Shown piece after piece: positions 9,441-58,700 of a stretch of DNA of 64,000 nt. The stretch comes from Octopus sinensis (taxonomy: Eukaryota): positions 81,096,001 through 81,160,000 of the forward strand of contig NC_042998.1 in NCBI RefSeq assembly GCF_006345805.1, read 5' to 3'. The translations under genes and the position numbers were made by a program. A model generated the notes under the pieces. That model made no database searches and had not been told where the DNA came from. It saw nothing but the letters and a program-made list of their open reading frames with translations. Numbering within the stretch: position 1 is the first letter of the stretch; the number at the start of each line of letters is the position of its first letter.

Positions 9441-9664
9441 GTCCGTCTGTCCGTAAATAATGCAAAATAATGCAGTAAATAATGTAAAAGAAGATAAAAC
9501 TACTTTCAATAACTGACATAGTTTATTCAAAATGCACATGTTAGTCATGTTTCTCTTCTACTATTGTAAATCTTCTTCCTGCTCTTCTTCGATACTGACA
9601 AGTAATGGGTTTCACGCAGAAGTAATGTGCCGCAAAGGAGTCTTTGATGAAAAGGCGTGTGTAA

Positions 9665-30243: not shown

Positions 30244-30640
30244 TTCTACTCAAGGCAAAAAGCCCGAAATTTTTGAGAAGGGGGCCAGTCGATTAGATCG
30301 ACCCCAGGATGCGACTGGTACTTAATTTATCGACCCCGAAAGGATGAAAGGCAAAGTCGACTTCTGCAGAATTTGACTCAGAACGTAAAGACAAACGAAA
30401 TACCTATTTCTTTACTGCCCACAAGGGGCTACACAGAGGGAAAAAACAAGGACAGACAAACGGATTAAGTCGATTATATCGACCCCAGTGCGTAACTGGT
30501 ATTTATTTAATCGACCCCGAAAGGATGAAAGGCAAAGTTGACTTCGGTGGAATTTGAACTCAGAACGCATCGGCAGACGAAATATCGCTAAGCATTTCGC
30601 CCGGCGTGCTAACTTGTCTACCAGCTCGCCGCCTTAGGTA
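30244..30640 (-). mobile_element. Dimeric SINE B with 16-bp target-site duplication
   Basis: AACAAGATAATGTCTT at 30228-30243 and 30641-30656 flanks the element. A further SINE B fragment lies immediately to the left (~30005-30222). Confidence 0.85.
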
Positions 30641-32589
30641 AACAAGATAATGTCTTATCAAGAGTTTCCGCTGGCGGTAATCCAACTGCAAGAGGAAGCA
30701 AATCAAAGCTTATAACAATGTTAAAAGCAGTAGGCATTGGTTGTGCTCATTTGTATATAAATAACTGCTGAATGCATGAAAGGAAGTAACTTAAGCACCG
30801 AGGGAGAGTGTGTGTAAATAAATTGGGAATGAGTCGACATGCACACTTTGCATGCAACCAGCCACATTTTATAAATTTATGCCATCGTTAGATTACAGTC
30901 CTCTCGGGAGAGCAAACATGTGATCATCTCGACTAATCGCGACTGGTTATATCAACAGATTAGTATATTTTGAGGGCCTCTCAGGAATGACATCCCAGTT
31001 CGAGATAAACACTTCAGTCATGATAGCATCATCATCCGTGCCTGATCAATAGTTGTACAGATCGATGAAAGCGACATGTTGAATCTTGTCGAACAGTTAT
31101 TTTATATGTGTAGAGCCTGAGCCGGCTCTAAGTCGAGTCCAATGGGAAGATTGCGCCGTAACATTTCTTTGACGAAGAAGGGCAACTAATTTTCTTCTCT
31201 CTGTTCGATGTCGTGATGTAGAGTGTGTGCTAGAGAAGGTTAATGACATATTTTTCAACCAACCCTACATCCGATTTTCAAAGTTTCAATTTTAGAGGGA
31301 AGTTGAGGTTGAGAAGGAAACGCTGTACATACTGAAAGGTGGAAGACAATAGTGAGAGGAGCCCATATGACATGCCTAGTTTCAGCAGCTCCTGTGAATT
31401 GTAGAAGCATTTAGGAGAGCGGATTTGCTTTTGGTAACCGAGGAAACTTGGATGTAAAAGGAATCCTTGATTGTCTGCAGGTGATTGACTCTTTGCAGAT
31501 GTTTTCATTTGCAATGTCTCCTCTTGATTTACCGCATGTGATATCAATGTTCTTAATTAACTCATCTTTCGCTAATTTTGCTTTAGTTCTATCTTCTCTA
31601 ATATTAACCTCATATTAATTTCTCTGTTAAATGGATGCATTCTGTGCCACAGTGTTTCAAGTCGTTTATCATATTCAATGTACAAATTGACATCGTACAT
31701 ATACAAATATTCTGCCATAGTATCTATATCCAACTTTGGTAAAGTTTACCATGTTGATAAAATGTGTTAGATTCCAGTGGAGTGAAAATACTCAGTATTT
31801 TTAGGACATTTATTTTCCTAATTTGCATGACATTAGTTTATAATGCTTCTGAAGGATATCTTGCTATTTACTGAAGACCCATACCAGGGCCAGTTTCCCC
31901 ATATTGTTACTATGTGGAGCCGTGTCGAATGGTCGTTATTATGTATGGGATGAATCTGTTGTTGGATGAGATCATCCTAAATATTGACTTATCGAAGGGA
32001 TGAGCATTTTTTTCTGACTGATGTCTCTGGTAAAGAGATCGCTAGGGTGTCGCATTTAGAAGGGATCAAGTTAGGAACTTAACTTACCCATCAAGTCTTT
32101 ACCAACTGAAAGCTGAAAGTAAAAATGTGGTTAACTATAATGTCCTCTAGAAAATTTGAGGAATTTGTGTATGGGTACGTGTGATCGCGCAGGTACTCGA
32201 ATTAATCTATGGATTGAAGGCTGCAGTCAAGAGAAAGAAATTACTCAAAACATGAGGTTGTTGGTGTCTTATAGTACCCTGATATTCCTTACATCCCTGC
32301 TGTTTTCTATGCAAGTGACTTTGTGTTGTTATATATTGTAACTTTGTGTTTTATGCTCTATCACATTACCGCCTCCATAACTCCATTTATTGTATACGCA
32401 CCTCACATCATGTTTGTTTGAAGTCATTTTGTATAACATATGCCATCTGTCTACGTCACGCCCCTGTAACCAATAGATGCAACAATATTATTGTTTCATT
32501 TGTTCATAAATCTCACAGACTAAGATGTTAAACGGTCCTGACATTTTAATTAGGGAAAGCCCCTACTGCTTCCTCTGCTGTGACTTACA

Positions 32590-32870
32590 CAGACAAGCCT
32601 TTCCCTCAAATCTTTGCTGTACCAAGACGTGCTGTCTTCTGCATGACCTGTAACCTAGTATCAACACCGATTTTACTTGCATAGTCCTCGAAACTATCCC
32701 ATATGTATTCCAATACTCCGATCATCACAGGAATCACTAAAACACTCTTCATTCCCCACAGCTTTTCAAATCTCTTCCTTCAGTGGCTCATAATCTTCCA
32801 TCATTCCATGCTCTTTATTTTCCAGCCTAATATCTCCTTGGATAAATACATCGATAATGTTGGCCCCCTT
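32590..32870 (-). mobile_element. Decayed R4/Dong-type C-terminal (RLE) fragment
   Basis: IIDVFIQGDIRLENKE..LWGMKSVLVIPVMIGVL..VMQKTARLGTAKI parallels the C-terminus of the intact ORF at 38.6 kb. Confidence 0.65.
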
Positions 32871-33639
32871 TTTTCTTGTTAACTATAATATTGACTTTGC
32901 CATTCATTCTTTCGGAGGCAATAAAATAGGTATTAGTTGGCCACTGAGGTCAATGTAATCGACTTAACCCTTCCCCCCGACACTGCTGGTTTTTGTGCCA
33001 AAATTTGAACCATTATTGTGCTAGAGCATGTTAATTGAATTGACATGTATTTTTTCTTTTGGTGACTGCAAGTCTCCACAAATATCAAGAATCTTCCGTG
33101 GCATTCTTGCAGAATATAAGACGGATATTTCCTTCAGGTCGACAATGTGAGTTTCAATATAAATCACTTTGGGTGTTGTGCCAAGTGTACCAATTATTAC
33201 ACGAATAATTTTTTTGGTCTTCCACTGTCTCCTCAGCGCTCTGGTTCGATCCTAATATTTCTAATTCGTTTTCAGTTTCGTTGGTGTTGACTCGGCTATC
33301 ATAAGTATTTACAAAATCTATGATCTTACAGTGTTTGTTTATTTTGCCATTTCCGGTTTTCTTGCTTCATTAGTATAAATCCTTAAATCCTTAAAAATGT
33401 TTTAGCCCGAAGGCCGCGGACATGCTGGGGCACCACCACTGTATAAAAGAGTGTGTGAGACAGCGCCAGTGGTTTCAAGGCTGGAAGAATTCACAGAGAG
33501 TTCAGTTTAACGAAGTAACCACACGGCTAAAAACTCTCACAAGATCCTGTAATTCTCCTTTTCTATCACACCCTCTGGTTCGTGCTCTTACCACTTTTCT
33601 GCTGTCTTGAAGCCACACACACACCAAACATCCCAAAGA

Positions 33640-34190
33640 ACCCTTATGCCTACAGAATGATGTCTACGCTTATACTCCCTTTGTGCTAGTATACAGAATT
33701 TAATCAAAAGGTGGTTCATACTCTCGTCTCTTTTCCTCTAGTTTCTACATTTGTTGTCTGACTGAGTTTTGTCGATTGTTGCCTTTATCAGGTTTGTTCT
33801 AAGGGATTGTTTCTGAGCGACTATAATTACTGTTCTCCTATTTCAAGTTCCTGTCTGTCAACCAGGGGCAGATATCTTTATTTCCAACATTCTCGGTTTG
33901 TTACATGAATTGGTTAGGTAGTCCCGCTTCTTTCTATTTTCTTTTGCTCTGTTGTTCTTCCTTTTCTCTTAGAATTTTCCCACACTTTTTGGGATATTTG
34001 TGGCTGCTGATAGCATTCTTTCTTTACTCTGCTCAACATAATTTTTCGGAACCAGTGTCATTGCATTTACAGCGTCTTCTGCCACTTTCTTTTCTTGGTA
34101 TTGTTTTTAGGTCGGTATTGTTTTTAGTGTGGAATGCATTGTCAATTGTGAACAGCCTTTTAGTTCTCTTATCCAAGTTCTGTTGCTAGA
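33640..34190 (-). mobile_element. Decayed R4/Dong-type fragment (post-RT region)
   Basis: LDKRTKRLFT..FH.K..DL..IPRKESGR..PWLT..NLK.E matches DRKTRK.MT..HHPKSDIERLY..R.EGGR..WL..LKAETE in broken frames. A further short C-terminal-like piece lies at ~33050-33175. Confidence 0.55.
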
Positions 34191-34429
34191 ACTTTATACA
34201 TTACAGAAAGGGAAAAGAGTATCTCAATACATAGCCCATGTATTTCTAGCTTTAATGATGTTCACTTGATTTAATTTTATTTCACGTGGTAAGTAGCTTG
34301 CTTACGAACCATCCTACTGAATTTACCTTGGAAAAGTGTCTTTAGGTCCACTAAAGCCTTGTGAGTGGATTTTGTCAACGGAAACTGAAAGAAGCCCGTC
34401 GTATATACTCTTCACTCTTTTACACCTTT

Positions 34430-34815
34430 ACTCTTTTACTTATTTCAGTCATTTGACTGTGGCCATGCTGGAGCACCGCCTTTAGTCGAGCAAATCGACC
34501 CCAGGACTTATTCTTTGGAAGCCTAGTACTTATTCTATCTGTCTCTTTTGCCGAACCGCTAAGGTACGAGGATGTAAACACACCAGCATCGGTTGTCAAG
34601 CGATGTTGGGGGGCAACCACAGACACACAAACACACACACATATACATATATACGACAGACTTCTTTCAGTTTCCATCCACCAAATCCACTCAGAAGGTT
34701 TTGGTTGGCCCGAGGCTCTAGTAGAAGACACTTGCCCAAAGTGATACGCAGTGGGACTGAACCCGGAACCGTGTGGTTCGTAAGCAAGCTACTTACCACA
34801 CAGTCACTCCTACGC
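34430..34815 (-). mobile_element. SINE family A, near full length
   Basis: Head, core, internal (CA)/(TA) tract and tail GGCGGTGCTCCAGCATGGCCACAGTCAAATGACTGAAA all present. Confidence 0.85.
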
Positions 34816-34825
34816 CTAATATAAT

Positions 34826-34899
<74 letters not shown>

Positions 34900-35142
34900 C
34901 TAAGTATATGTGTGTGTGTGTATGTGTGTGCTCCAGTATTACCGCAGTCAAATGACTGAAATAAGTATTCCATAAGTTCTGTCTGATTTTACCATTTTAA
35001 AACTGAATGAAATTTAATAGTATTTTAGAATGTCTAATGGAATTTTAAAATATTTTTATGTATTTGTGTACATTTAAACTAATGAAATATTATTTTACAG
35101 AATAATATAATTAAAATTTCTTTGATTAAAAACCTTTCTAAC

Positions 35143-36138
35143 ATGGAAGTATCCAAAGAGCATTTAAGGCACATAATGTACAAATATACATAATGTACAC
35201 ATAATGTACATAATGTACAAAAAGTGGAAACTCTGAAGCCGAAGCGACTCGAAATATATACTCAGTTTATGAGAAAGAATGCTTGAATGAAAGAACTTGC
35301 AGAAGATGGTTCGTAAAATTCAGAAGTGGAGATTTCAGCCTTGGAAATGAAAATTGAACAGAACGTCCAGTTGAGTTTGATGATAGGCTCCTTGAAGAAA
35401 ATCCTGCATTATCAGTTAAGAATTGGCAATAAAGTTTAGTTAAAATCAAACAACTGTTCATCGTCCTCTTCAACAACTTGGAAAGGTTCCTAAACTTGGA
35501 AAATGGGTGCCTTATGAATTGTCCGAAAGCAACCGCAAATCCCGAGTTAACATCTGCTGTTCTCTCCATTCTCGCGAACTCATTCCACCCTTTTCGTATA
35601 GATTTGTGACTGGTGACGAAAAATGGATTTTCTATCGAAATGTTAAACGTCGTAAACAGTGGCTCAACCACAATCGAGAAGGGAACTTCATGGGAAAAAA
35701 GGTTCTTCTCTCTATCTGGTGGGATTGTAAAGGAGTAATTCACTTTGAATTGTTACTACCTAATGCAGCAATCAGAGCGTTTGAACCAAGCTTTGAAGAA
35801 AAAACCCGCTTTAGTGAATCGAAAAGGAGTGATGTTTCATCAGGACAATGCGCGACCCAACACTGCAAATATCACATCACAAAAAATTGAAGAGCTTGGT
35901 TGGGAAAAAAATTCCTCATCTACCTTATTCTCTCGTCCTTGTTCCTTCAGACTACCATTTGTTCCATAGTTTACAGAATCAGCTGGGGGACATAATTTTT
36001 GCAAGCCAGGAGGTCGAAACTGATATTTCAGAGTTCTTCGTTTTGAAACCAAAAGAGTTTCATATGGATGGGATTAAAAAGCTTGTAAAAAGATGGAAGG
36101 ATGTCATTGATAATCAGGGCAAGTACATTGATGATTAA
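35143..36138 (+). pseudogene. Mariner (DD34D) transposase pseudogene
   Basis: MEVSKEHLRHIM.., WVPYEL, VTGDEKW, WWDCKGVIHFELL, HQDNARP and PYSLVLVPSDYHLF, ending DNQGKYIDD*. 34 residues between the last two D after correcting a frameshift; stops, frameshifts and deletions present. Confidence 0.9.
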
Positions 36139-36289
36139 ATTTCAATTAAATATTACATTTCATCACTTGTTTTTCTATTCAAAATTTGGAGAAGATTAAA
36201 AGAGCAATAGAGAATACCTTCCTAATTTTCCTCTTCCTCTTTCATTTCTCTTATCGTTTTGAAATACTTCGATAAATTTCTAACCCTAA

Positions 36290-36490
36290 TTATTCCACAG
36301 CGATCGAATGATGTTGTCTTGTGGCTATTTTATGCCGTTAGGCTTTTACTTCTGGTCACTCTCCATACTCAGTACAACGCACTTATCTATGCCAAACATC
36401 ATTCCATTGTTTCATCAGAACATTCTCATTGTCTGGATCAGAGAATCCAGCTCTGTCTCATTTGTGTACGTATCTTGACGTTAATTATGT
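36290..36490 (-). mobile_element. Decayed R4/Dong-type RT fragment
   Basis: NETELDSLIQTMRMF..GMMFGIDKCVVLSM matches the region after YMDD (..L..LL.TV..F..I.M.FGLEKCAKVTM). Confidence 0.55.
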
Positions 36491-36860
36491 AAAGCGGGTG
36501 ATTTATCCTTATCTTCGTTTGGGTAGACTCATTGGTCGGCCTGGAGTTTTTTTTCAGTGTATTTTATCAGAGAGTTTAGCGTAATGACGAAGCGAGTCAG
36601 CCTGGAAAATGCCCCTGCGTATTTTAACGTTACACTTTTATTCCTTTACTTGTTTCAGTCATTTGATTGCAACCATGCTGGAGCACCATCTTTAGTCAAA
36701 CAAATAGACCCAAGGACTTGTACTCTGTAAGCCTTATTCTATCGGTCTCTTTTGTCAAGCGATGGGGAGGGGACAAACATAGACACACAAATACAGCTTC
36801 CATATATACATACATACACACAGACAGACAAACAAACAGACACACTCACGCACACACACG

Positions 36861-36951
<91 letters not shown>

Positions 36952-36984
36952 TAGATGGAAACTTCCTCAGAAGATGAGCGATTG

Positions 36985-37290
36985 ATGTCATTACAATTCT
37001 TTTGAACCTTAGGTCTGCCTGAAATCCAATCAAAAATTTGCCGGTACTTTTCTTGATCATTTCCAGGACACCCATAATAACAAGGCTGGTTTTGGTTTTT
37101 TATTGCCATGTTCTAAAGATATCAATCCATGTATTTTGACAGTTTTTCAACTTATTTTACCACGATGTTTGTATTAGTAAGTATCGTCATATCAATTTAC
37201 CGACATGTCTTTTGTCTTAGAGTTTTGATGTCGATGTCAGCCCTGTTTTCATCTATTTGCCTTCTGTATGTAGCCCCTAACCGCATAGGA
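36985..37290 (-). mobile_element. Decayed R4/Dong-type RLE fragment
   Basis: [39 protein letters not shown] parallels RPDIVV..CFLIDVSV..EKLSKY..IVGALGMIKK. Confidence 0.65.
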
Positions 37291-37324
37291 TGGTTTCAAC
37301 AGTCTTTTATATTATTATTATTAT

Positions 37325-37604
37325 CATTGCTTTTGCACAGCTTCTAATGCTGCAGATGTACTACAGTGTCAGCTGTTCACCACCAGTGAACAAAGGTAAC
37401 ACCTTTTATTTTTCGGGCACCTTCTGGAGTATTCGAGTGGTTCCAAGCAGTGCTGTTTTCTGCAAGTGATCCACCCTTATTGTAGCCTCTATTTGTTCCA
37501 CTTATTTCTCGAAATTTTTGCTCACTGTTCTCCGGGTACTACAGCTACTTTTTTCATCGACCACAACTGCTTAACTTCCCAAGCTAAACTGTGATATATC
37601 TCAA
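37325..37604 (-). mobile_element. 5'-truncated R4/Dong-type element (ORF end + 3' UTR) in (TAA)n
   Basis: SLAWEVKQLWSMKK..HLQKTALLGTTRILQKV followed by a distinct 3' UTR; TAA repeats on both sides. Confidence 0.75.
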
Positions 37605-37622
37605 ATTATTATTATTATTATT

Positions 37623-37797
37623 CTATGTTTGACTTTTTCTTTATATTTGTACAAGTTGGCTCCAAGTCTCACTCAGAGACCTCAAGAGACAACAAGCTGG
37701 AAGTTCGAGATGTTGTTATGCCTAGTATGCCATATATTTAGTTTTGTATTTAGTGTTGTACTAGTGAATGTCAAATACAAAAAACGAAATTTATGTT
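37623..37797 (-). mobile_element. Short non-coding insert between TAA arrays, probably the 3' UTR of another Dong-type family
   Basis: 175 bp flanked by TAA arrays. Family assignment is inferred from position and orientation only. Confidence 0.45.
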
Positions 37798-37821
37798 TTA
37801 TTATTATTATTATTATTATTA

Positions 37822-37891
<70 letters not shown>

Positions 37892-38447
37892 GAGTGAGAG
37901 AGCAGTGCATGCCATCAAAGTGACACTGGGGTAAAATATACGAAACCCAATATACCCATCATGACTACCCGTCTGATAAGGGTACACCAGGCACATGCAT
38001 CACAACCATATGTGCGCGACATGGTGATCTCATATTAAGATAAACAGCACATGACCTTGCAGGTGGGGCCCAGTTAGAATATTTTCTTCAGGTTGAGTAG
38101 CCCATCCCGCTCAAAAGGTCCCTGAATAAGGGTTGTTTAAGGATGTTGAAAGAACCACCCATGTTTCCAGAGGTGAATTATTCAAACCCCAAAGAATCCC
38201 TCTCAACACATGGCTATGATGCTCCCCCATTACTTCTGCTCGTGATCAGAGATGCACATATCGTCAGCCACTAAGGAACATGCTCAACTGGTTAAGGTCA
38301 AACAACTGACAAGCAAATCTGTGGTATTGAGCAGAATATTTCCTGTAGCCCATCTTTTATACCAAGACAAAACAATGTACATGATAACACTTCCAATCAG
38401 TTAAGATCAGAAGCCATGAGAGCCACTGCCTGGTACTGCACCAGGGC
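37892..38447 (-). mobile_element. Element X copy 1: ~556-bp non-coding element in (TAA)n
   Basis: No long ORF; TAA arrays on both sides; homologous copies at 42876-43431 and 43448-43590. Confidence 0.8.
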
Positions 38448-38487
<40 letters not shown>

Positions 38488-38541
38488 ATTATTATTATTA
38501 TTATTATTATCATCATTACTATTTTTATTATTATTATTATT

Positions 38542-41500
38542 CAGTAGTTTTATTTTTATTTTTATAGCGTGCTTTCACTTCACTACCGAGCGCAGCTCTG
38601 TGTGCCTTGGGTATGTGCTGTGATTTGTTGTGATGCCCTGATGGTTATTGTATGGAAAGTGTTCTGCGTAGGATGTGTGCAGTGCCTAGTAGTGCAATTT
38701 TCTGTATGTTATATGTGTTTGTAAGTCCTGGTGTTTTTGTTATGTATTTGTCTGAATATTTTTTTATCATGCCTAATGCACCTACTATGATAGGAATTGT
38801 TTCTGTTTTCAGATTCCACATTCTAGTTACCTCTATTTCCAGGTCTTTGTATTTTGAGAGTTTCTCCATTTCTTTTAGAGACACGTTGTCATCTGCCGGT
38901 ACTGATACATCAATTAGAAAGCATTTTTTTTCTTCATGGTCTCTGACAACTATATCTGGTCTGTTGGCCTTAATTTCTCTATCTGTGTGTATCGGCATAT
39001 CCCAGAGTATGGTTGCTTTCTCGTTTTCTGTGACCTTTTCTGGTGTGTGCCTATACCATCTTTTTTCTGTTGTTATTCCATAATGTTGGCATAGCTTCCA
39101 ATGTATGTAAGTTCCAACTCTGTCATGTCTGTGAATATATTCCTTCTTAGCCAGGACTGGGCAGCTAGAGATAATATGATTTATTGTTTCTTGTCCATCT
39201 CCACATATTCTGCAGTTACTTGTAATATTTCTTTTCATTACATGTTTTTGGTAATTTCTGGTGGGGAGGCTTTGGTCTTGTGCTGCAATTAAAAATCCCT
39301 CTGTTTCTGCTTTGAGTCCTGAGCTTCTCAACCATTGCTGGGATTTTTCTTTGTCTATTTCTTTTGCGTTTAGTTTAGTCCAGTATTTACCATGAAGGGG
39401 CTTTTCTTGCCATCGTTTTATCATGGTTCGTTGCTGTTCTATTTTTAGTTTGGATTTCATTTTTTTTATAGCTTTTGTTGTTTCTTCCTCTTCTTCTTCC
39501 TCTTCTTCTTCATGTTTATTAGGTGGTATGATTTCTTGTTTGTATTTGTCAGCTTCCTTAAATACTGAGAACAGTTTTTTGTTTTGCTCGTGTTTTGCCG
39601 CTATTTGGATCAGTTTTCCTTCCTTCTGAAGTAGATATTTTTGCAGTCCTATGGTGGTTATTTTATAGTAGTTTTCCAGCTGTATAAGGGCTCTACCACC
39701 TTCTATACGTTGTATATATAGTCTTTCTATGTCAGATTTTGGGTGATGCATCCTAGATCCTGTCATTATTTTTCTTGTTTTCCTGTCTATTTTGGTCAGT
39801 TCATTTCGTGTCCAGTTAAGGATATTGTAGCTGTAACTTATAACTGGGACAGCTAAAGTGTTGATACCTATTATCTTGTTTTTAGCATTGAGCTCTGTGT
39901 TTAGTATTGATCTAACTCGTCTATAATATTCTTTTTTTATTTTCTCTTTCATTTGTGTGTTTTGTGTCTTATCTAATTCATGGATTCCTAAGTATTTGTA
40001 AGTTTGGCTTTGGTCTAATTCTTTTATTTCATTTGCTTCATCTAGTGTGATGTTGTTACTCTTAACTAGTTTTCCTCTTTTCATGGTTACTTTGGCGCAT
40101 TTTTCTAATCCAAATTTCATATCTATTTCTTTGGTAAATCCATGAACTGTCTTTAATAGTGTTTCCAGCTGTTTGTCATTTGCAGCGTATAGTTTTAGGT
40201 CATCCATATATAAAAGGTGGCTGATCGTTTTGCCGTAACATTTATATCCGCATCCAGTTCTATTTAGCATATCAGATAGAGGTGACAGTGCCAAGCAGAA
40301 AAGGAGTGGAGAGAGCGTATCTCCCTGGAATATTCCTCTTCTAATGGGGATGTCTTTGGTTTTCATGAGTCCCTCTTTTGTTTGGAGGTGTAGGACTGTT
40401 TGCCATTTATTCATAGAGTGCTCTATGAATTTTATGATTGTTGGTGCTACTTTGTTAATGGCTAGTGTTTCGAGGATCCATATGTGGTGGATGCTATCAA
40501 ACGCCTTTTTGTAGTCAATCGAGGCCATACTGAGGCCTTTCTTCTTTCTGTGGCTGTCTTCAGTTATGGCTTTATTAATCATTAGTTGATCTTTACAGCC
40601 ATATGAGCCTTTGCGGCATCCTTTCTGCTCTTCTGGGAACAGTTTGTATTCGTCCAGGTGCTTGTTCAGCCTTTGTGATATCACTGCAGTAAATGCCTTG
40701 AACATAGTAGGGAGGCAGGTTATTGGTCTGTAGTTTTCTGGTTTTTCTGTTTCATTTGATTTGGGAATTAAGATGGTTTTCCCCTTCGTGAGCCATTCAG
40801 GCATTGTCTCTGGCTCTGCTAGTACGTTGTTAAAGTTTTCAGCCAGCTTTTTGTGCATTCCTGTTAGATATTTCAACCAGAAGTTGGGGATCTTGTCATG
40901 CCCAGGTGCCTTCCAGTTGCTTAGTCTTTGCAGTGCCTGGGTGACCTCTTCAGTTGTTATGGGGGTCCAAGTTTGTTCAGATGCCGAGTTTGTTATTTTG
41001 ATACTCCTTTTTTTTGGTGGTTCGTTCGCCGACCATATTTCTCCCCAGAATTCTTCCAATTCTTCTGCCGTTGGTGCTGCAGTGACTTCTATTTTATTTT
41101 TGCCCAGTTCTTGGTAGAACTTTTTGGGGTCGGAGTTGAACTTTTTGTTCTGTTCAAAGAAGCGTTGGCGTTTCTCGTACCGGCGGATTCTTTGAGCTTT
41201 GGCAAGGATATCTTGCTTCAGCTTTTCTTTTATCTCCGGCAAATCTTTTTCTGTGGTGTTATATTTGCGGAGCATTTTTGTTCTCTTTTTGTTGCTCAGT
41301 AGCGTTGCTTGTTTGCTGATTTCATTAAGAATCGACAGGTCTTTTCTAATTTTTTTAATTTTGTTTTGGATGTTATTTATCCACAGGGTTTGTTTGGGTG
41401 GTGGTACTCCTGTTTGGGCGGGTTTGGGTGAGTATCCAGCTTCTTTTGTGGCTGCAGTGGCTGCTGCGTATATCAAGTCATTTAGTTCAGTGATATCACT

Positions 41501-42001
41501 TTTTTTTGTTTCAGTGGCTAGTTCAGTGACGGCTAGGTTTATGTTGTTTATAATTGGTGTTGTTATTGCGTTTATTTTTATTCTTGGGAGGTATGTTCGG
41601 TGGTCCATTTTGAGCTCTGTGGTTTTTAGTTCTTTGATTATTTTATTTTTTATATTATCATAATCATTAGGCTCCCCTTCGTTGTTTACATCGTGTTTGT
41701 TGGGAATGTTGCGTTTGTCTTCGTGTTTTACAGTTTCAGTGTTTATATTATTGGGCATTGTTGTGTGGCTTCTATCTACATTTTCCTGGTGTATGTTTTC
41801 TTTTAGGTGTTCCATTTCTATTTCTGATATTTTTTTTGTGTTGAGAATGTATCTTTGTACGTTAGCTAATTTATTAGGGTTCATTGCTGTATCCAAGTCT
41901 AAATCTCTATTATTTTCCTTCCATATTTTATATGTATGTGTTGTTGTATTTTCATTTTTTGGGTAGAGTACTGCTGTGAAGTATGCGTGTAAGATAGAAA
42001 T

Positions 42002-42004
<3 letters not shown>
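38542..42004 (-). mobile_element. R4/Dong-clade non-LTR retrotransposon inserted in a (TAA)n microsatellite
   Basis: Single ORF with RT, CCHC knuckle and restriction-like endonuclease; ~100-bp 3' UTR ending ACTACTG(AAT)n; TAA arrays at 38450-38541 and 42003-42063. Confidence 0.92.
38645..41896 (-). CDS. Reverse transcriptase / CCHC / restriction-like endonuclease polyprotein (1083 aa in the track; frame is open a further 36 codons to 42004)
   Basis: Motifs KAPGHD, NYRPITCL, EEQKGCR, IDYKKAFDS, GIFQGDTLSPLLF, YMDD, FGLEKC, YKYLG, CRICGDGQETINHIISSC, RHD, RPDIVV..IDVS..EKLSKY. Confidence 0.95.
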   Translation of the reverse strand: MDTAMNPNKLANVQRYILNTKKISEIEMEHLKENIHQENVDRSHTTMPNNINTETVKHEDKRNIPNKHDVNNEGEPNDYDNIKNKIIKELKTTELKMDHRTYLPRIKINAITTPIINNINLAVTELATETKKSDITELNDLIYAAATAATKEAGYSPKPAQTGVPPPKQTLWINNIQNKIKKIRKDLSILNEISKQATLLSNKKRTKMLRKYNTTEKDLPEIKEKLKQDILAKAQRIRRYEKRQRFFEQNKKFNSDPKKFYQELGKNKIEVTAAPTAEELEEFWGEIWSANEPPKKRSIKITNSASEQTWTPITTEEVTQALQRLSNWKAPGHDKIPNFWLKYLTGMHKKLAENFNNVLAEPETMPEWLTKGKTILIPKSNETEKPENYRPITCLPTMFKAFTAVISQRLNKHLDEYKLFPEEQKGCRKGSYGCKDQLMINKAITEDSHRKKKGLSMASIDYKKAFDSIHHIWILETLAINKVAPTIIKFIEHSMNKWQTVLHLQTKEGLMKTKDIPIRRGIFQGDTLSPLLFCLALSPLSDMLNRTGCGYKCYGKTISHLLYMDDLKLYAANDKQLETLLKTVHGFTKEIDMKFGLEKCAKVTMKRGKLVKSNNITLDEANEIKELDQSQTYKYLGIHELDKTQNTQMKEKIKKEYYRRVRSILNTELNAKNKIIGINTLAVPVISYSYNILNWTRNELTKIDRKTRKIMTGSRMHHPKSDIERLYIQRIEGGRALIQLENYYKITTIGLQKYLLQKEGKLIQIAAKHEQNKKLFSVFKEADKYKQEIIPPNKHEEEEEEEEEETTKAIKKMKSKLKIEQQRTMIKRWQEKPLHGKYWTKLNAKEIDKEKSQQWLRSSGLKAETEGFLIAAQDQSLPTRNYQKHVMKRNITSNCRICGDGQETINHIISSCPVLAKKEYIHRHDRVGTYIHWKLCQHYGITTEKRWYRHTPEKVTENEKATILWDMPIHTDREIKANRPDIVVRDHEEKKCFLIDVSVPADDNVSLKEMEKLSKYKDLEIEVTRMWNLKTETIPIIVGALGMIKKYSDKYITKTPGLTNTYNIQKIALLGTAHILRRTLSIQ

Positions 42005-42063
<59 letters not shown>

Positions 42064-42818
42064 TACTTTTAATCTGCATGTCTGTTATCATCACTCGCCG
42101 ACAAACACCGGCATCCTAGGGTAAGTGAAGGATAAGAGATATTAAGATATGACTGAAAGCTCGGGATGGGTAAGTGGCAGGGGCAGTGGCGAAATATCTT
42201 CATGTACTACAACACAGGCATTTAAATTGATAGGGTTTTTCTAAGGATGTGGGCAGTAATTGTCAGCACAATTTTTTTGATTTCTCTGAGATATGGTTCT
42301 CCTGAGATATTATCTAGATGTTTCTGACATTTCTTTCTTATCATACCTTGGGAAGCCACAATAACAGGAACAGTTATCGCTTTAGGATGCCATATTTTTT
42401 TAATTTGAATTTCCAGGCCCTTATATTTACTTAATTTGTCAAATTCCTTTACAGATATATTTTTATCAGTGGGAACACTTACATCTATTAGTCTACAAAT
42501 ATTTTCTTCCTTGTCTTTAATGACTATGTCTGGTCGATTAGTCTGGATCGTTCTGTCGGTGTTGACTGGAAAAATCCCAGAGGATAGCGACATTTTTACC
42601 TTCAATGACTGGCTCAGGATGATGTTCATACCAGTAAGCCGGAGTGTTTATTTTGTAGTGTTTACATATTTTCCAATGTTAATACTGTCCTACCCTATCG
42701 TTTCGATTTTTGTAATCATTTGGTGTTAGCAAAAGGACATCCTGAGACGAGATGCTTTATTGTTTCTTCAAATTTATCGCAGAATCTGCATTTACGGTCA
42801 GAACCGTTATGAAGAACG
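42064..42818 (-). mobile_element. 5'-truncated R4/Dong-type element of a different family (CCHC + RLE + 3' UTR) in (TAA)n
   Basis: CRFCDKFEETIKHLVSGC..DRVGQY*HWKIC..NRPDIVIKDK..IDVSVP..KLSKY..AHILRKTLSI*; unique ~155-bp 3' UTR; TAA arrays on both sides. Confidence 0.88.
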
Positions 42819-42857
<39 letters not shown>

Positions 42858-42875
42858 ATTTTTATTATTATTATT

Positions 42876-42918
<43 letters not shown>

Positions 42919-43431
42919 CGCATGTCATCAAAGTGATACTGGGGTAAAATATACGAAGCCCAGTATACCCATTATGACTACCCGTCTGATAAGGGTGCAC
43001 CAGATACAAGCATCACAACTATATGTACGCGACATGGTGATCTCATAAACAGCGCATGACCTTGCAGGGCCCTGTTAGAATTTTCTTCACGTCGAGTAGC
43101 CTATTCGCTCAAACAAATAAGGTGTGTTTAATGATGTTGAAAAAAACACCCATGTTTCCAAAGGGGAATTACCCAAACCCCAATGAATTCTTTTCAATAC
43201 GTGGCTGTAATGTTCCCCAACTACTTGTGCTCGTGATCAGAGATGCACATATCGTCAGCCACTTAGGGTAATATACAACTTGTTAAGGTCAAGTAGCTGA
43301 CAAGTAAATCTGTGGGAGGGGGCAGAATATTTGCTGTAGCCCATCTTTTATACCAAGACAAAACAATGTACATGATAACACTTCCAATCAGTTAAGATCA
43401 GAAGCCATGAGAGCCACTGCCTGGTACTGCA
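42876..43431 (-). mobile_element. Element X copy 2 (diverged, with expanded GA tract at its 3' end)
   Basis: Colinear with copy 1; TAA on both sides. Confidence 0.8.
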
Positions 43432-43447
43432 TATTATTATTATTATT

Positions 43448-43590
43448 GAGTGAGAGAGCAGTGCATGCCATCAAAGTGACACTGGGGTAAAATATACGAA
43501 GCCCAGTATACCCATCATGACTACCCGTCTGATAAGGGTACACCAGGCACATGCATCACAACCATATGTGCGCGACATGGTGATCTCATA
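43448..43590 (-). mobile_element. Element X copy 3, 5'-truncated (143 bp)
   Basis: Two substitutions relative to the same part of copy 1; keeps the CTCTCTCACTC(AAT)n end. Confidence 0.85.
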
Positions 43591-43936
43591 ACACGATAAA
43601 CACGAAGACAAAGGCGACAACAACGAAGACGACGACGACAGCGATAACAACGATGACGGCAGCGGCGACGATGATGTCAGGATAAATGTGGGGACAGCAT
43701 GGCAACAACAAAGATCATGTGGGTGATTACGATGATGATGCTGATGATGCTGATGATGCTGATGATGGTGGTGGGGGTGGTGGTTTTGGTAGTGATGACG
43801 ATGATGACAACGACGACGACGCTGTAAACATGACCATGTAATTTACCTTGACAACATCGATGGGGATTACGGTATTTTCTTTAGTTAATCGAGTAGAGAT
43901 AAGAAAAAAAAGTGGGGGATTAGCAGGAAGGATTAG

Positions 43937-44407: not shown

Positions 44408-44636
44408 AAATAAGGTGGTAGAAACGTTAGCACACCGGGTGAAATGCTTAACGGTATTTCGCCTGCTGTTAGGTTCTGAGTTCAAATTCCGCCGATGTCG
44501 ACTTTGCCTTTCATCTTTTCGGGGTCGATTAAATAAGTTCCAGTTACGTACTGGGGTCGATGTAATCGACTTAATCCGTTTGTCTGTCCTTGTTTGTCCT
44601 CTCTGTGCTTAGCGCCTTGTGGGTAGTAAAGAAATA
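44408..44636 (+). mobile_element. SINE B monomer with 12-bp target-site duplication
   Basis: GATGATGCTAAT at 44396-44407 and 44637-44648. Confidence 0.8.
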
Positions 44637-44933: not shown

Positions 44934-45024
<91 letters not shown>

Positions 45025-45520
45025 CCCTCCTCCTCCTCCTCCTTATCATCATCATCTGCATCAACATTGTTACCACCAATTCCACCACCACACCACCACC
45101 ACCACCACCACCACCACCACCACCACCACCACCACCACCACCACCACCATCACTACCACCACTACCACCACCACCACCACCGCAAACACCAGAATCACCA
45201 CCATCGTTATCAGTATCATCATCGTCGTCATCGCAAATATTACCATCATGATCATGATCATCATCACCATCATCATCATCAACATCACCGTCACTATCAT
45301 CATTGTGGTGCTGGTGAAGGTCATCATCCTCATCATTAGCGATACTACCACCGCCATCACCATAGTTATCATCATCATCAACATCACCATCATCATCATC
45401 GTCGTCGTCATCATCATCATCATCATCATCATCATCACTGGCATTGTTACTGCCACCACCTTCATCCTCCTCATCCTCATCCACAACAACAACAACAACA
45501 ACAACAACGTTATCAATTGA
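44926..45520. repeat. Compound trinucleotide tract (CAT, CCT, CAC, CAA)
   Basis: Direct reading; it gives rise to the homopolymeric ORFs in the track. Confidence 0.9.
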
Positions 45521-52849: not shown

Positions 52850-54240
52850 ATTTCGAGGTGACGTGTACTCTTAACGCTTTCATTAATCTTCTTATTATTT
52901 ATTCTGTCTAGTCTTGCTCGCTCATTCCGTGTACATTTGAGAATATATCTCTTACTTGTAACGAGGAGAACCATAATAACGTTGCCTATGATCTGTTCTT
53001 GTTTTAAATATCTCTTTAATTCGCCTGTGAATAGTATTCTGGTTTATTGATTCCTAAATATTTATAAGTCTACGTTTGGTCAGTCTCTCATTATCTCTGT
53101 TACTAATTCAATCTTGATATTATTCATGTTGTGAATTAATTTACATTTCCTCATCGTTGACATTACGCATATATTCTTAACAAAATCTCATACCTCTTGA
53201 TAATCGCTGTAATGTCTACAACTGTGCATCTAGCTATTCATCAACTGGTTCGTACTATATCCATATACAAAAGATGCTTCATTTTCTGTCCTATAACATT
53301 GTATCCGATTTCAACCTGTTCTAACAAGTTGGTTATACCTGTAAGCCCCAGACAGAAGAGAAGTGAAGCGATAGATTCGCTTTGGAATATCGATATTTCT
53401 ATATATTTTGTTTTTGTTTGTTTCATACACAAGCATAGTTGTATCGTTGAGAACCTCCTTTTGAAATCACATAATTTCGGGTTTAGTTCCACTGCGTTTC
53501 CCCTTGATCAACTGTCTTCTACTATAGCTCCTGTCTATATGGTAGATAGGAACTCCGTTGAAGCACGTCGCATGTATTCATATACATATATACATGCACA
53601 CACACACGCTCACACATATCTTCTAACTATATATACTTGTTCTCCTCTACCGCTGGTGGAGGATTTCCTTGTACCAACGAAATAATTTGTGTTTTGAAAC
53701 ACAACGCGTCCATGAGATATTATTTCTGGACGAACACCGCCGTCAATTTGCATTTTTGCGATGCATCTGTATTACGTATGATACACAGATTGCTGTTTTA
53801 ATCAAATACTGCTTGTGCTACATATAACCGATTTTTAAACACACACGCCACATCACACTATACCACACATGCGCTCCCACGCACACACGCGCACGCCACA
53901 TAAAAACACGCAATATGTGTAACGAAAAGACATTTCATCAGTGGTCTACCCAATCAGAGCAGGACGACTGGAAAACAACAAAACGACTGGAAAACTGCAA
54001 CATTAATAATAACAACAACAACAACATGAACAGCATCAACAACAACTTCATCAACGACAACAAACATAATAATAATCCTTTCTACTGTAGGCACAAGTAC
54101 TGGAGTTTCGGGGAAGGAGGAAGTCGATTACATATCCCCGATTTAATCGGCCCCGAAAGGATTAAAGGTAAAATTGAAATCAGAACGTAGCAACAGACGA
54201 AATATCGCTAAGAATTTCGCCCGGGGTGCTAACGATTCGG

Positions 54241-56830
54241 GGAACATTTGTCTAGCCAGCGGAGACCACACCCGTTCACTATCCAGGAGAATCCGAGGTG
54301 CCTCAACCTCAGCGCATGTCTGCGAACATTAACCAAGGCATCCCTAAACCTCCCTTTAAAGCGTTTCACAAGTGGCGACCTGCCCTTCCACTAAAAGCGA
54401 AAGAGCTGTCTCTCCAAACTGATCAACCACGAATCCGGACAGGTCACCACGGTCAGGCGGTAGGTAATGACCGATGCGATAAACACATTGGCCACCTGCG
54501 CCCTCTCCTTCAGGTATAGCCACCGCCAAGACCAGGTCTTGACTACTGCAGCCACCCTGCTCAATACCTCCGTCCAGTTCTTCTCTATCTGGAGGCCTGG
54601 TCCAAACCAAACTCCCAGCAATTTAACCGGTCTCTCCATCCAGTGCCCAACAACGCTGTCTGAAGGCATCTACTTGCCAACCCAGGTGCCGAGCTGCAAA
54701 CCGACAGACTCTTCCCGGTTAATCTTTGCTCCTGCGTCCTCTTCGTAAGCCTCAATAGTCTTACCCACTTCACGTAGGCGTGCTACTGAGGTTACGCTGA
54801 TAGTGATATCATCCGCGTAAGCTGTAACAAACTCCTCTGGACTAGGTTTTCTAGGGATGCCACTCAACCTTCGCAGTAGGGGCTCGAGAGCCATCACATA
54901 CAAAAGTGGTGAGAGCGGACATCCTTGACGAACCGAGCGTCTGATGCAGAACGGTTTCGAAAGGAAACCGTTCACCCGAACTATCGAGTCAATGTTGTGG
55001 TACAAAGCGATAAACCACCTGAGAAAGCCAAGGCCCAGGCCGAACCGCGCAAGCACAGTCGCCAGGTATCGATGGTCGACCCAATCAAAAGCTTTAGATT
55101 AGTCTAAATGCACCAATGCCCCACCTTTGCCAGAGTTATCACCAACCCTCTCTATGGTATAGCGAATAAGATGGAGATTATCTTGAATGGTTCTGCGTGG
55201 GATGGCATATGTCTGTGCCTCCCGACTATACCATTCGCGACACGCGCCAACATTTTTGCTAAAACCTTGGCCAAAATCTTCACTTCTGCGTTTAACAGAG
55301 TAATGGGTTTGAAATTATCTTAAACGTCCCCCTTGTCCAGGTACTTTCTGACCAAAGTCACTACTCCTCGGCGCACAGATCTGGGGATAAACCCATTCTG
55401 TTGCCAGTTCGCGTACACGTCAGCCAGTGGTTGTTCGAACAAGTCTGGCATACATTTATACAGCTCGTACAGAAGACCATTAAGTCCCGGCGACTTACCC
55501 TCTTTGCAGTCGGCCAAAGCCTCCATCACCTCCACAGGCGTGATTGGCCCTTCGTAAGACTCCGCATCCCACCGCGAGAGACACGGCATCCTGGCAAGAA
55601 AGTCCTCGAGGTCTCTCCCACCACCAGGATCGCCGTCGCCCCCGAACAGCTGGGCGAAGTACTCCCGAAAGGCCTCACACATTTTCTCGGGTTCGTTTAC
55701 CAAGACACTATTTTGATTCGTCAAAAACCGAATAGTGGAACTATTTCCTTGCCGAGCTCCCACCACTCGGGCCCATCCAGTGGCCTTGATTCCTTCACTT
55801 CCCATCGCACGTAACTTAGCTCTGGCAATACTTCCCATGTGTTGGGCTTCAAGATGCTGGCTTAACTCCATTCTGTTCACCCTTGCTTGGTCCGCATTAC
55901 CAGTCCTCCAGGCTTCTTCTAGTTCCTTAACTAGACCATCTCCTATTCTACGTCCCTTCTTAGCTAAACTTATGCTAAACCTAATAGACTTATATTTGAT
56001 GGCTCTTTTTAGGGCGTACCACCATTTGTTATTAATGATGGTACCTGTTAATCCCCTCTGTATTAACATCTTGATCCGCTTTATGTACTCCTCAATCGCC
56101 AAAAGGGACGTATTGTGTTTCCAGTAGCCAGATTCCCGACTATGCAACTTATCTATCGTCAGTTTACAGCTAACCTTCTTGTGGTCACTGTAACTGACTA
56201 GAAAAAACTGTGGACACTCGGCTATGGAATTATCTGTTTCTCTAATTAAAATCCTATCTAGATATGTTCTGGAGGACCCGTCACTATTTTATCACGTCCA
56301 CTGTGGAGTGTTCGGGTGTTCCAACCTATATGGATCTTCTAGCTGAAATTGACTTAGCAGATCCCATAAGCCTGGGTTACATTTTCTGTTCATGTTCGAG
56401 CCAACACAATCTATGTGTGCTTCACATATTGTGTTAAAGTCTCCTAGCAATACTAGCGAATGCGAGGTGGCTAGGAACTTGCCCAGGTCACGAAAATATT
56501 AACTTTACGGGCCCATAATGTTGGGTGCATAAATAGCGACTAGCCTGATTACCTTGCCACAACTGAATGTCAGGTCAAGAACGACCAACCTGCATTCTGG
56601 GTCAGAAAAAACAACTTTTTCTCGGCTACCCAGTTTCTTTTTAGTAGGACCAACACCAGATCCCCACCTCCCGCTCGACTCGGAGAAACGTATTTCTCGT
56701 AGTCGTTCAGGAGGGGGAGTAGATCTCTTGGCCTCTTCACCCGGGTTTCCGTTGCAACAATTACATCCCTATTTCTCGACCTGATGTCATTTAGGAAGCA
56801 CCCTTGCTTCCAACTCGACATCAGATCATG
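54241..56830 (-). pseudogene. ORF2 (APE endonuclease + RT) of the L1/Tx1-type element
   Basis: VATET, VAIYAP, LGDFN, LDRI, SDHK, GYWKHN, KSPGLNGL, PITLLN, KAFD.VDH, SVRQGCPLSPLLY, AYADD, KIN.EES; several stops and frameshifts. Confidence 0.9.
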
Positions 56831-56835
56831 AACAT

Positions 56836-58442: not shown

Positions 58443-58700
58443 TCTATTTCTTTACTACCCACAAGGGGCTAAACACAGAGAGGACAGACAAACGGATTAA
58501 GTCGATTATATCAACCCCAGTGCATAACTGGTACTTATATAATCGACCCCGAAAGGATGAAAGGCAAAGTCGACCTCGGCGGAATTTGAACTCAGAACGT
58601 AGCGACAGACGAAATACCGCTAGGCGTTTCGCCCGGCGTGCTAAGACGTATGAAATACCGCTAAGCATTTCACCCGGCGTGATAACGTTTTCGTTTTGTC
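58443..58700 (-). mobile_element. SINE B monomer nested in the head of another SINE B
   Basis: AGACGTATGAAATA at 58429-58442 and 58644-58657 flanks the inner copy; a duplicated head segment lies to its right. Confidence 0.7.

What the first reader, a model, noticed from the sequence alone, without database searches (positions are those of the whole stretch)
37308..43590. Self-renewing (TAA)n landing pad holding at least seven stacked insertions
Seen, left to right and all on the minus strand, each separated by TAA arrays: Dong-type 3' fragment, 175-bp UTR-like piece, X1, long Dong element, a different Dong family fragment, X2, X3. The 3' ends are all different, so at least four distinct families are involved. 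Established: R4/Dong-clade RLE elements are sequence-specific and Dong targets TAA repeats. Inference: each insertion leaves TAA on both sides and renews the target, so one microsatellite grows into a multi-kb community shared by several autonomous families and a passenger.
Basis: partly seen in the sequence, partly recalled or inferred. Interest (0 to 1): 0.8.

Follow-up and report, generated by a model that had tools for sequence, protein, structure and literature searches.

The report
Dong retrotransposon pile-up in TAA repeats
A 6.6-kb stretch of an unidentified animal genome is a head-to-tail pile of at least eight dead copies of TAA-repeat-seeking "Dong" jumping genes and a short non-coding hitch-hiker, which is a clear example of known behaviour rather than a new kind of system.

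Summary
Between 36,962 and 43,602 at least eight retroelement pieces lie head to tail on the minus strand, separated by seven (TAA)n arrays of 4 to 31 units. These arrays hold every (TAA)4 match in the 64-kb window.

- **Dong-type pieces:** four are coding fragments of four divergent lineages.
- **Element X:** three pieces are copies of a 0.56-kb non-coding element.
- **Orphan end:** one piece is a 177-bp 3' end with no coding similarity.

The "long Dong element" has an intact reverse transcriptase (RT), zinc knuckle and restriction-like endonuclease (RLE). It is cut off at the 5' end inside the conserved N-terminal block, so the pile holds no autonomous copy.

Relatives in eight loci from other assemblies behave the same way. 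TAA lies on the sense strand 72-164 bp after the coding end in 18 of 22 copies. A solo copy has TAA on both sides. Same-polarity stacks of two to five copies occur in five loci.

The best explanation is repeated TAA-targeted, target-primed insertion, which is published behaviour for Dong. Persistence of the target after each insertion is shown. Net "self-renewal" of the array is not. X is a plausible Dong passenger whose partner is unidentified. I rate this a new member of a known kind, of modest interest.

The parts
43446..43602 (-). X3: 5'-truncated copy of element X (last ~155 nt). Its 5' end joins non-TAA low-complexity DNA.
   Evidence: 97% identical to the X1 tail; alignment; flank read.
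43432..43445 (-). (TAA)4 plus TA, a short linker between X3 and X2.
42874..43431 (-). X2: near full-length X copy that lacks the first 9 nt of X1. Its tail motif CTCTC has expanded to about (CT)18 at roughly 42,881-42,915.
   Evidence: first 97 nt identical to X1, remainder 84-88%.
42820..42873 (-). TAA array of 18 units with two in-phase substitutions (AAA, TTA).
42062..42819 (-). FragB: 5'-truncated Dong-type copy holding the zinc knuckle, the RLE (frameshifted) and a ~160-nt 3' UTR.
   Evidence: HMM positions 1006-1202, E 1e-44; only 54% identical to the long copy.
42003..42061 (-). Pure (TAA)19 plus TA.
38540..42002 (-). Long Dong-type copy. The reading frame is open from the 5' junction to the stop codon at 38,645-38,647. 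It has RT (YMDD), a CX2CX8HX4C knuckle, an RLE and a 105-nt 3' UTR. It is 5'-truncated inside the conserved N-terminal block.
38450..38539 (-). TAA array of about 30 units with five in-phase substitutions (AAA, TAG, TGA, TGA, TAT).
37890..38449 (-). X1: full-length 560-bp non-coding element X, ending in CTCTCACTCAA.
   Evidence: no coding similarity; no tRNA or Rfam head.
37798..37889 (-). (TAA)22, then TA, then (TAA)8.
37621..37797 (-). UTR175: orphan 177-bp non-coding 3' end of unknown family.
   Evidence: no similarity to any other piece or to Dong proteins.
37606..37620 (-). (TAA)5 short linker.
37324..37605 (-). FragA: Dong-type fragment with the last ~65 codons (frameshifted) and a ~95-nt 3' UTR.
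   Evidence: blastx E 3e-9 to residues 1106-1172 of P0111, in two reading frames.
37312..37323 (-). (TAA)4 short linker.
36962..37311 (-). It is a decayed Dong-type RLE C-terminal fragment. Its 5' end abuts the TAA linker, and its 3' UTR is missing, replaced by (TA)5(TG)n at 36,808-36,960.
   Evidence: tblastn E 6e-11; blastx E 1e-12; sequence read.
31593..36465 (-). Older Dong-like debris in the same orientation, without recognisable TAA arrays: 36,250-36,465; the colinear pieces 34,075-34,182, 33,591-33,833 and 32,609-32,767; and 31,593-31,718.

Best explanation
This locus was hit repeatedly by TAA-repeat-specific non-LTR retrotransposons of the R4/Dong kind. These elements have a single ORF with a reverse transcriptase, a CCHC zinc knuckle and a C-terminal restriction-like endonuclease.

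Proposed mechanism (inferred from established R2 and Dong biology, not shown here):
1. The element's protein nicks the TTA strand of a TAA microsatellite.
2. The nick primes reverse transcription of an RNA whose 3' end carries UAA repeats.
3. Most copies arrive 5'-truncated.

Because the copy lands inside the array, TAA remains on both sides, so the same place can be hit again. RNA-target pairing fixes the polarity, so every copy points the same way.

Over time at least four divergent Dong lineages, an orphan 3' end and three copies of the 0.56-kb non-coding element X piled up. X most likely borrows a Dong-type enzyme, using its own discrete 5' and 3' ends and a TAA tail. The long copy is the most recent, because its 3.3-kb frame is unbroken. 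It lacks the start of its N-terminal block, so it cannot act autonomously.

Shown: the anatomy, the polarity, the family identities, the truncations and the generality in relatives. Inferred: the order of events, mobilisation of X in trans, and any growth of the arrays.
For: - TAA arrays: all (TAA)4 matches in 64 kb lie in this stack, on one strand (69 found against 0.11 expected).
- Orientation: eight of eight pieces point the same way (2^-7, about 0.8%, if orientation were random).
- 5' junctions: seven of the eight 5' ends, truncated at different points, abut a TAA array.
- Protein identity: RVT_1 E 7e-32; match to R2 structures over residues 312-1064, E 7e-35; CCHC and PD...D...K motifs align to R2; 42-49% identity over the full length to about 1,100-1,250-aa relatives, including the Pediculus protein. 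Pediculus is one of the species used in the published R4/Dong alignment (PMC7998251).
- Relatives: 18 of 22 Dong-type C-termini in the window and eight related loci have a same-polarity TAA array 72-164 bp downstream, and none has an opposite-polarity array.
- Solo copy: in Diaphorina citri it sits between 102-bp and 120-bp TAA arrays.
- Stacks: two to five copies in L002, L003, L004, L007 and L008.
- Literature: Dong targets TAA in insects, molluscs and cnidarians (PMC3812793, PMC7998251). The Bombyx Dong 5' end follows (TAA)7 on the sense strand (PMC3774820).
- Distinct lineages: the long copy and FragB are 54% identical in the RLE region, yet each is 59-68% identical to foreign relatives.
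- X: three of three copies lie in TAA. Two copies start within 9 nt of each other and the third is 5'-truncated.
Against: - No empty allele or orthologous site is available, so a pre-existing microsatellite is not demonstrated.
- X3, the 5'-most piece, has no TAA upstream, and E8 has lost its 3' end, so neither original flank is defined.
- No full-length Dong copy or X partner is in the window, and the X tail matches none of the four Dong-type 3' ends present.
- Several older Dong-like fragments (31.6-36.5 kb and 53.3 kb) have no TAA next to them.
- No RT phylogeny against reference Dong, R4 and R2 sequences could be run.
Confidence: 0.8

Rival explanations
1. Some or all junctions arose in a single integration event. 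The reverse transcriptase finished or abandoned one RNA and jumped to the UAA tail of another, producing a head-to-tail concatemer of unrelated pieces joined by tail-length TAA linkers.
For: - Three junctions are short linkers of only 4-5 units between heavily truncated pieces: X3-X2, UTR175-FragA and FragA-E8. The other four arrays are 18-31 units long.
- The same two length classes (3-6 units against 16-40 units) appear in related loci.
- End-to-end template jumping is an established in vitro property of the R2 reverse transcriptase (my own knowledge: Bibillo and Eickbush 2002, 2004).
Against: - The pieces differ greatly in decay. The long copy has no disabling mutation in 3.3 kb, while FragA, FragB and E8 carry frameshifts and stops.
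- The X copies belong to two subtypes.
- Long arrays with in-phase substitutions look like old genomic microsatellite, not RNA tails.
Confidence: 0.15
2. No TAA microsatellite existed beforehand. A founder copy (for example X3) landed at a non-TAA site and brought a TAA tail. Every later insertion went into that tail or into later tails, so all TAA in the block is element-derived.
For: - X3's truncated 5' end joins non-TAA DNA directly.
- The window contains no TAA array free of elements, although it holds about 160 AT and AC arrays.
Against: - The solo copy in Diaphorina has a 102-bp TAA array on its 5' side with no detectable upstream element.
- Element-free TAA arrays exist in related loci (L004 at 2,131-2,250, and L006).
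- The array 3' of the youngest copy is old.
- This reading still requires TAA-targeted insertion, so it changes only the origin of the first array.
Confidence: 0.2
3. X is not a Dong passenger. It is mobilised by another retrotransposon whose copies also end in TAA repeats, such as an I-type or other APE-type LINE, and sits here by chance or because of a general A/T-rich target preference.
For: - The X tail resembles none of the Dong 3' ends in the window.
- Some APE-type LINEs end in TAA repeats (the I element; PMC3747384).
- An APE-type LINE remnant lies at 54-57 kb.
Against: - Three of three X copies lie inside the TAA stack, which is about 0.6% of the window, in the same polarity as the Dong copies.
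- The two near full-length copies (X1, X2) have 5' ends that abut TAA.
- No X copy lies elsewhere in the window.
Confidence: 0.12
4. The block was built by recombination (unequal crossing-over between TAA arrays, or segmental duplication) or by assembly error, not by serial insertion.
For: - The 97-nt head is 100% identical between X1 and X2 although the rest of the two copies is 84-88% identical. That could be a gene-conversion tract.
Against: - Apart from X, the units are all different sequences with different truncation points.
- No larger unit is duplicated.
- The same architecture occurs in independent assemblies.
Confidence: 0.03

Closest known systems
Dong (Bombyx mori), DongAg, DongBg and Darwinula Dong1/2: the R4/Dong clade of RLE non-LTR retrotransposons
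   Same: - Single ORF with RT, a CCHC knuckle and a C-terminal RLE.
- A conserved N-terminal block without zinc fingers.
- Insertion into (TAA)n with TAA on the sense strand on both sides (PMC3812793, PMC7998251, PMC3774820).
   Different: - At most 49% identity to anything retrievable.
- All copies here are 5'-truncated, so the 5' HDV-like ribozyme shown for Bombyx Dong cannot be assessed.
- Multi-lineage stacking was not described in any paper I could reach.
R2 short internally deleted elements (SIDEs) and LINE-dependent SINEs
   Same: X is short, non-coding and has discrete ends. It is found only at the target of an RLE element, and it has a 5'-truncated copy, as expected for target-primed reverse transcription.
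   Different: - No parent element is available to show shared termini.
- No Pol III-type head.
- The tail is unrelated to the Dong 3' ends present.
TRAS and SART in Bombyx telomeric repeats, R1 and R2 in rDNA, and Utopia in U2 snRNA gene arrays
   Same: Target-specific LINEs of several families accumulate in one repetitive niche in fixed orientation. Utopia is occasionally inserted in tandem in U2 genes (PMC4640811).
   Different: The niche here is an ordinary interstitial trinucleotide microsatellite rather than a multicopy gene or a telomere, and the array can change length by slippage.
L1 and Alu insertion into earlier poly(A) tails
   Same: The tail of one retroposed copy offers a target for the next, giving same-orientation clusters.
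   Different: L1 relies on a loose endonuclease preference (TTAAAA) and an APE-type nuclease. Here the enzyme is a sequence-specific RLE and the repeat is TAA.

Membership tests
R4/Dong clade (RLE-type non-LTR retrotransposons, R2 group) | Single ORF with a reverse transcriptase domain | tested here: met
   RVT_1 E 7e-32 at residues 377-639; YMDD present.
R4/Dong clade (RLE-type non-LTR retrotransposons, R2 group) | CCHC knuckle and PD-(D/E)xK restriction-like endonuclease C-terminal to the RT, with no APE domain | tested here: met
   - CX2CX8HX4C and RPD...IDVSVP...EKLSKYK align to the same motifs of solved R2 proteins.
- zf-RVT scores 24.4 bits, below the Pfam cut-off of 27.5.
- No Exo_endo_phos hit.
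R4/Dong clade (RLE-type non-LTR retrotransposons, R2 group) | Insertion into (TAA)n, with TAA on the sense strand at both ends | tested here: met
   - Window.
- Relatives: 18 of 22 copies, with none in opposite polarity.
- A solo copy has TAA on both sides.
R4/Dong clade (RLE-type non-LTR retrotransposons, R2 group) | N-terminal SANT/Myb-like block without zinc fingers (PMC7998251) | tested here: inconclusive
   - Relatives share an N-terminal block, R..WT..EY...M.....A.L..SG...TK.T..IWR..NP.
- The window copy keeps only its last part and starts at HMM position 76.
- Pfam gives no Myb hit even at E up to 5. The Myb assignment rests on the paper's HHpred result and was not re-tested.
R4/Dong clade (RLE-type non-LTR retrotransposons, R2 group) | RT phylogeny groups the element with Dong and R4 rather than R2, NeSL, CRE or HERO | not testable with these tools
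   - No reference Dong or R4 sequence could be fetched.
- Indirect support: 42% identity over 99% of the length to the Pediculus humanus protein, from a species used in the published R4/Dong alignment. Against R2 structures the match is only a partial E 1e-35.
R4/Dong clade (RLE-type non-LTR retrotransposons, R2 group) | 5' HDV-like self-cleaving ribozyme at the element's 5' junction (shown for Bombyx Dong, PMC3774820) | tested here: inconclusive
   - All Dong copies in the window lack their 5' end.
- Rfam finds no ribozyme in the window or at the 5' ends of full-length relatives.
- Those 5' ends are conserved across assemblies.
SINE (Pol III-derived head plus LINE-derived tail), considered for X | tRNA-, 5S- or 7SL-derived 5' head | tested here: not met
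   No ARAGORN or Rfam hit on X, even at E up to 1.
SINE (Pol III-derived head plus LINE-derived tail), considered for X | 3' tail shared with the partner LINE | tested here: not met
   The X tail is unrelated to the four Dong-type 3' ends in the window (z at most 1.2). The partner may lie elsewhere in the genome.
Internally deleted derivative (SIDE-like) of a Dong element, considered for X | 5' and 3' termini identical to those of a full-length parent | not testable with these tools
   - No full-length parent is in the window, and the host genome is not in the searchable collections.
- There is only a weak 10-nt resemblance of X's first bases to one type of Dong 5' end, and the alignment is not convincing.

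The most novel reading that the evidence does not exclude
X may be a previously undescribed kind of passenger of microsatellite-specific RLE retrotransposons. It would be a promoter-less, non-coding RNA with a strictly conserved 97-nt 5' module, copied by Dong enzymes mainly because it ends in UAA repeats that pair with the nicked TTA strand. That relaxed, tail-based choice of template would explain why five unrelated 3' ends share one array. It would also make TAA microsatellites a shared niche that insertions help to maintain.
Probability: 0.3. Interest if true: 0.5.

Novelty: new member of a known kind. Interest (0 to 1): 0.3.

Why it matters
The locus is a compact, well-resolved example of how a sequence-specific retrotransposon niche fills up. 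Several anciently diverged lineages and a non-coding hitch-hiker share one harmless target, always in one orientation.

It is also useful in practice. Long TAA arrays in invertebrate genomes should be read as likely Dong graveyards, and X-like pieces in them as candidate non-autonomous partners.

If tail-based template choice were confirmed, it would bear on how RLE-type enzymes select their RNA. That question matters for current efforts to engineer R2-type enzymes for targeted insertion.

None of this overturns current understanding.

Tried and rejected
- **Host identification:** the ten longest non-Dong ORFs gave no Pfam hit, and the best relatives of the Dong ORF are only 49% identical. The host stays unidentified. 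It is an animal genome of about 37% GC in which perfect simple repeats cover 6.8% of the window.
- **X copies elsewhere:** exact searches with the X head and tail in JGI metagenome contigs and IMG/VR found nothing. A literature search for X sequence strings also found nothing.
- **Pol III head or ribozyme in X:** no Rfam or ARAGORN hit. Folding of the head and the tail was no better than shuffled sequence (z -1.1 and -1.0). By eye the 5' end forms only a 5-bp hairpin, which does not fit an HDV-like fold.
- **X head against Dong 5' ends:** a 10-nt resemblance (ATGYCCTGG) did not hold up in alignment.
- **HDV-like ribozyme in full-length relatives:** Rfam found none.
- **Passengers in other species' stacks:** the only candidates were an 886-bp non-coding piece in L004 and a 553-bp piece in L003. 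The L003 piece partly matches stretches of other loci, one of them inside a minus-strand gene with a weak zf-RVT hit (L001), so it may be a fragment of another retroelement rather than an X-like passenger.
- **Junction scars:** I considered that the interruptions 4-5 units after X2 and after the long copy mark where an element-borne tail meets the target. I rejected this because the variant units (AAA, TTA, TAG, TGA, TAT) are all in phase and so look like point substitutions.
- **Key papers:** Xiong and Eickbush 1993 and Kojima and Fujiwara 2004 are not held in the library.
Full report
**What is in the sequence**

Read on the minus strand from 43,602 down to 36,962, the region is a chain of retroelement pieces. 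Each piece except the last is followed by a TAA array. In order:

| Piece | Coordinates | Followed by |
|---|---|---|
| X3 | 43,446-43,602 | (TAA)4 |
| X2 | 42,874-43,431 | 18 units |
| FragB | 42,062-42,819 | pure (TAA)19 |
| long Dong copy | 38,540-42,002 | about 30 units |
| X1 | 37,890-38,449 | (TAA)22, TA, (TAA)8 |
| UTR175 | 37,621-37,797 | (TAA)5 |
| FragA | 37,324-37,605 | (TAA)4 |
| E8 | 36,962-37,311 | (TA)5(TG)n, no TAA |

All 69 matches to (TAA)4 in the 64-kb window fall in this block and on the minus strand. Shuffles predict 0.11. The window otherwise holds about 160 AT and AC arrays but no other TAA array.

**What the pieces are**

The long copy has an open frame of 1,083 codons by the ORF list. 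It carries RVT_1 (E 7e-32). It matches solved R2 retrotransposon proteins from the RT through the endonuclease (residues 312-1064, E 7e-35). Its CX2CX8HX4C knuckle and its RPD...IDVSVP...EKLSKYK endonuclease motifs align to the R2 equivalents.

It is 42-49% identical over its full length to proteins of about 1,100-1,250 aa from other assemblies. One of these is a Pediculus humanus protein, and Pediculus is among the species used in the published R4/Dong alignment (PMC7998251).

The other coding pieces are C-terminal fragments of the same kind of protein:
- FragB has tblastn E 1e-31 and HMM E 1e-44.
- FragA has blastx E 3e-9 in two reading frames.
- E8 has blastx E 1e-12.

All three carry frameshifts or stops. 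UTR175 and X have no coding similarity. The five preserved 3' ends are mutually unrelated.

1. The stack does not end at 37,308. E8 is an eighth piece whose truncated 5' end abuts the last TAA linker.
2. The long copy is not complete. Its reading frame stays open up to the junction at 42,002. A profile built from eight relatives matches it only from position 76. The relatives carry a further conserved N-terminal block, and full-length copies have 0.6-0.85 kb between the 5' TAA array and the point where this copy's homology begins. PMC7998251 assigns this block to a SANT/Myb-like DNA-binding domain. I did not re-test that assignment, and Pfam gives no hit. The pile therefore contains no autonomous copy.
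3. X3 has no TAA upstream, and E8 has lost its 3' UTR to a (TG)n array. Neither original flank is preserved.
4. Older Dong-like fragments, all on the minus strand and without TAA, extend to 31.6 kb, and one more lies at 53.3 kb.

**Distinct lineages**

In the endonuclease region the long copy and FragB are 54% identical to each other. Each is 59-68% identical to elements from other assemblies. In the other's ranked list of about 120 relatives they sit at rank 60 and rank 35. FragA and E8 have different best relatives again. At least four anciently diverged Dong lineages have therefore used this one locus.

**Element X**

X1 and X2 start within 9 nt of each other, and X3 is a 155-nt 3' piece. 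That pattern is what a discrete unit copied from its 3' end would give.

X has no tRNA, 5S or other Rfam-recognisable head and no unusually stable fold.

The first 97 nt of X1 and X2 are 100% identical. The body is 84% identical and the tail 88% (P about 4e-6 under a uniform rate). This could mean a constrained 5' module in the source lineages, or a gene-conversion tract between two copies 5 kb apart. Two copies cannot distinguish these.

All three X copies lie in the TAA stack in the Dong polarity, and none lies elsewhere in the window. X is therefore best read as a TAA-targeted, non-autonomous element that uses a Dong-type enzyme. Its partner is not in the window, and its tail matches none of the Dong 3' ends present.

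**Related loci**

I fetched eight loci that encode relatives.
- Counting the window as well, 18 of 22 Dong-type C-termini have a TAA array of the same polarity 72-164 bp downstream. None has an opposite-polarity array.
- A solo copy in Diaphorina citri sits between 102-bp and 120-bp TAA arrays.
- Same-polarity stacks occur in L002 (five copies), L003 (three), L004 (four, plus one reversed copy next to reversed arrays), L007 (three) and L008 (two).

Stacking is thus a general property of this clade and not a peculiarity of this window.

**Literature**

- Bombyx Dong has a 5' HDV-like ribozyme that cleaves at the junction with upstream TAA repeats. That implies co-transcription from upstream sequence (PMC3774820).
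- I found no paper in the searchable library that describes multi-lineage stacking in TAA arrays or a Dong passenger. The two key older papers are not held.
- Analogous niches are known. One example is Utopia inserted in tandem in U2 genes (PMC4640811).

**Mechanism and what remains open**

The best explanation is serial, TAA-targeted, target-primed reverse transcription. The uniform polarity, the varied truncation points that all abut TAA, and the unequal decay of the pieces support separate events. The long copy has no disabling mutation in 3.3 kb, whereas the fragments are broken.

That the target persists after each hit is shown. Net renewal of the target is not shown, for three reasons:
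- The array just 3' of the youngest copy is the most mutated, with five in-phase substitutions, so it is mostly old target.
- Total TAA does not scale with copy number between loci. It is 222 bp around one copy in L005, about 108 bp among five copies in L002 and about 375 bp here.
- This genome holds a 504-bp imperfect trinucleotide array nearby, so one large original array, or later slippage, could account for the total.

The linkers fall into two length classes: 4-5 units at three junctions and 18-31 units at four. This leaves room for occasional template jumping within a single event, a known in vitro property of R2 reverse transcriptase (my own knowledge). Consensus-based dating would settle this.

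**Verdict**

"Self-renewing" and "autonomous" go beyond the evidence.

The biology is that of Dong as already described. What is new is a set of new lineages, clear documentation of stacking across several genomes, and a candidate non-coding passenger. I rate it a new member of a known kind, with interest about 0.3.

Noticed in passing
window 33449-33540 (-): Rfam Vault RNA match just above the gathering score (37 against 34 bits, E 1.6e-4). It lies between the zinc-knuckle and RLE remnants of an old Dong-like element, so it could be a vault RNA gene, a vault-derived retroposon or a chance hit.
   Followed up: no
window 3841-4047, 30431-30637, 44413-44607, 58481-58644, 59320-59465: An interspersed repeat of about 150-200 bp in both orientations, 88-93% alike. 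It is probably a SINE or MITE family.
   Followed up: no
window ~54300-57600 (-): Decayed APE-type LINE with ORF1-like, endonuclease and RT pieces, in a 49% GC patch.
   Followed up: partly
window 53253-53420 (-): Isolated Dong-like RT fragment (HMM E 5e-12) with no TAA array nearby. It has the same orientation as every other Dong-like piece in the window.
   Followed up: partly
window ~42881-42915: In X2 the tail motif CTCTC, as seen in X1 and X3, has grown into about (CT)18. This is a microsatellite born inside a retroposed copy.
   Followed up: yes
window 15426-15654 and 16453-16681 versus 16789-17017: 229-nt arms that are 97% complementary, with two direct copies and one inverted copy. This may be a foldback or MITE-like element.
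   Followed up: no
whole window; e.g. 9214-9477 and 44934-45437: Very high simple-repeat load. Perfect repeats cover 6.8% of the window, with 94 AT and 66 AC arrays. There is also a (TCCGCCCGTCTG)n 12-mer array and a 504-bp imperfect (ATC)n tract next to the stack.
   Followed up: no
L001:9171, L003:14415, L004:14808, L008:9709 (type A); L002:5712, L003:9530, L008:13554 (type B): Full-length Dong relatives begin, right after the 5' TAA array, with one of two conserved 5' termini. Type A (GTCCTGGGTATGAC...) occurs in three different assemblies. Type B (GGCTCTCAAGG...) was seen only in loci from one assembly (ERZ25067903). These are candidates for the 5' ribozyme or promoter module, and Rfam does not recognise them.
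   Followed up: partly
L005:8498-8615 (-) and L005:1063-1176 (+): Two 5S rRNA-like matches lie upstream of the Diaphorina citri Dong copy, on opposite strands.
   Followed up: no
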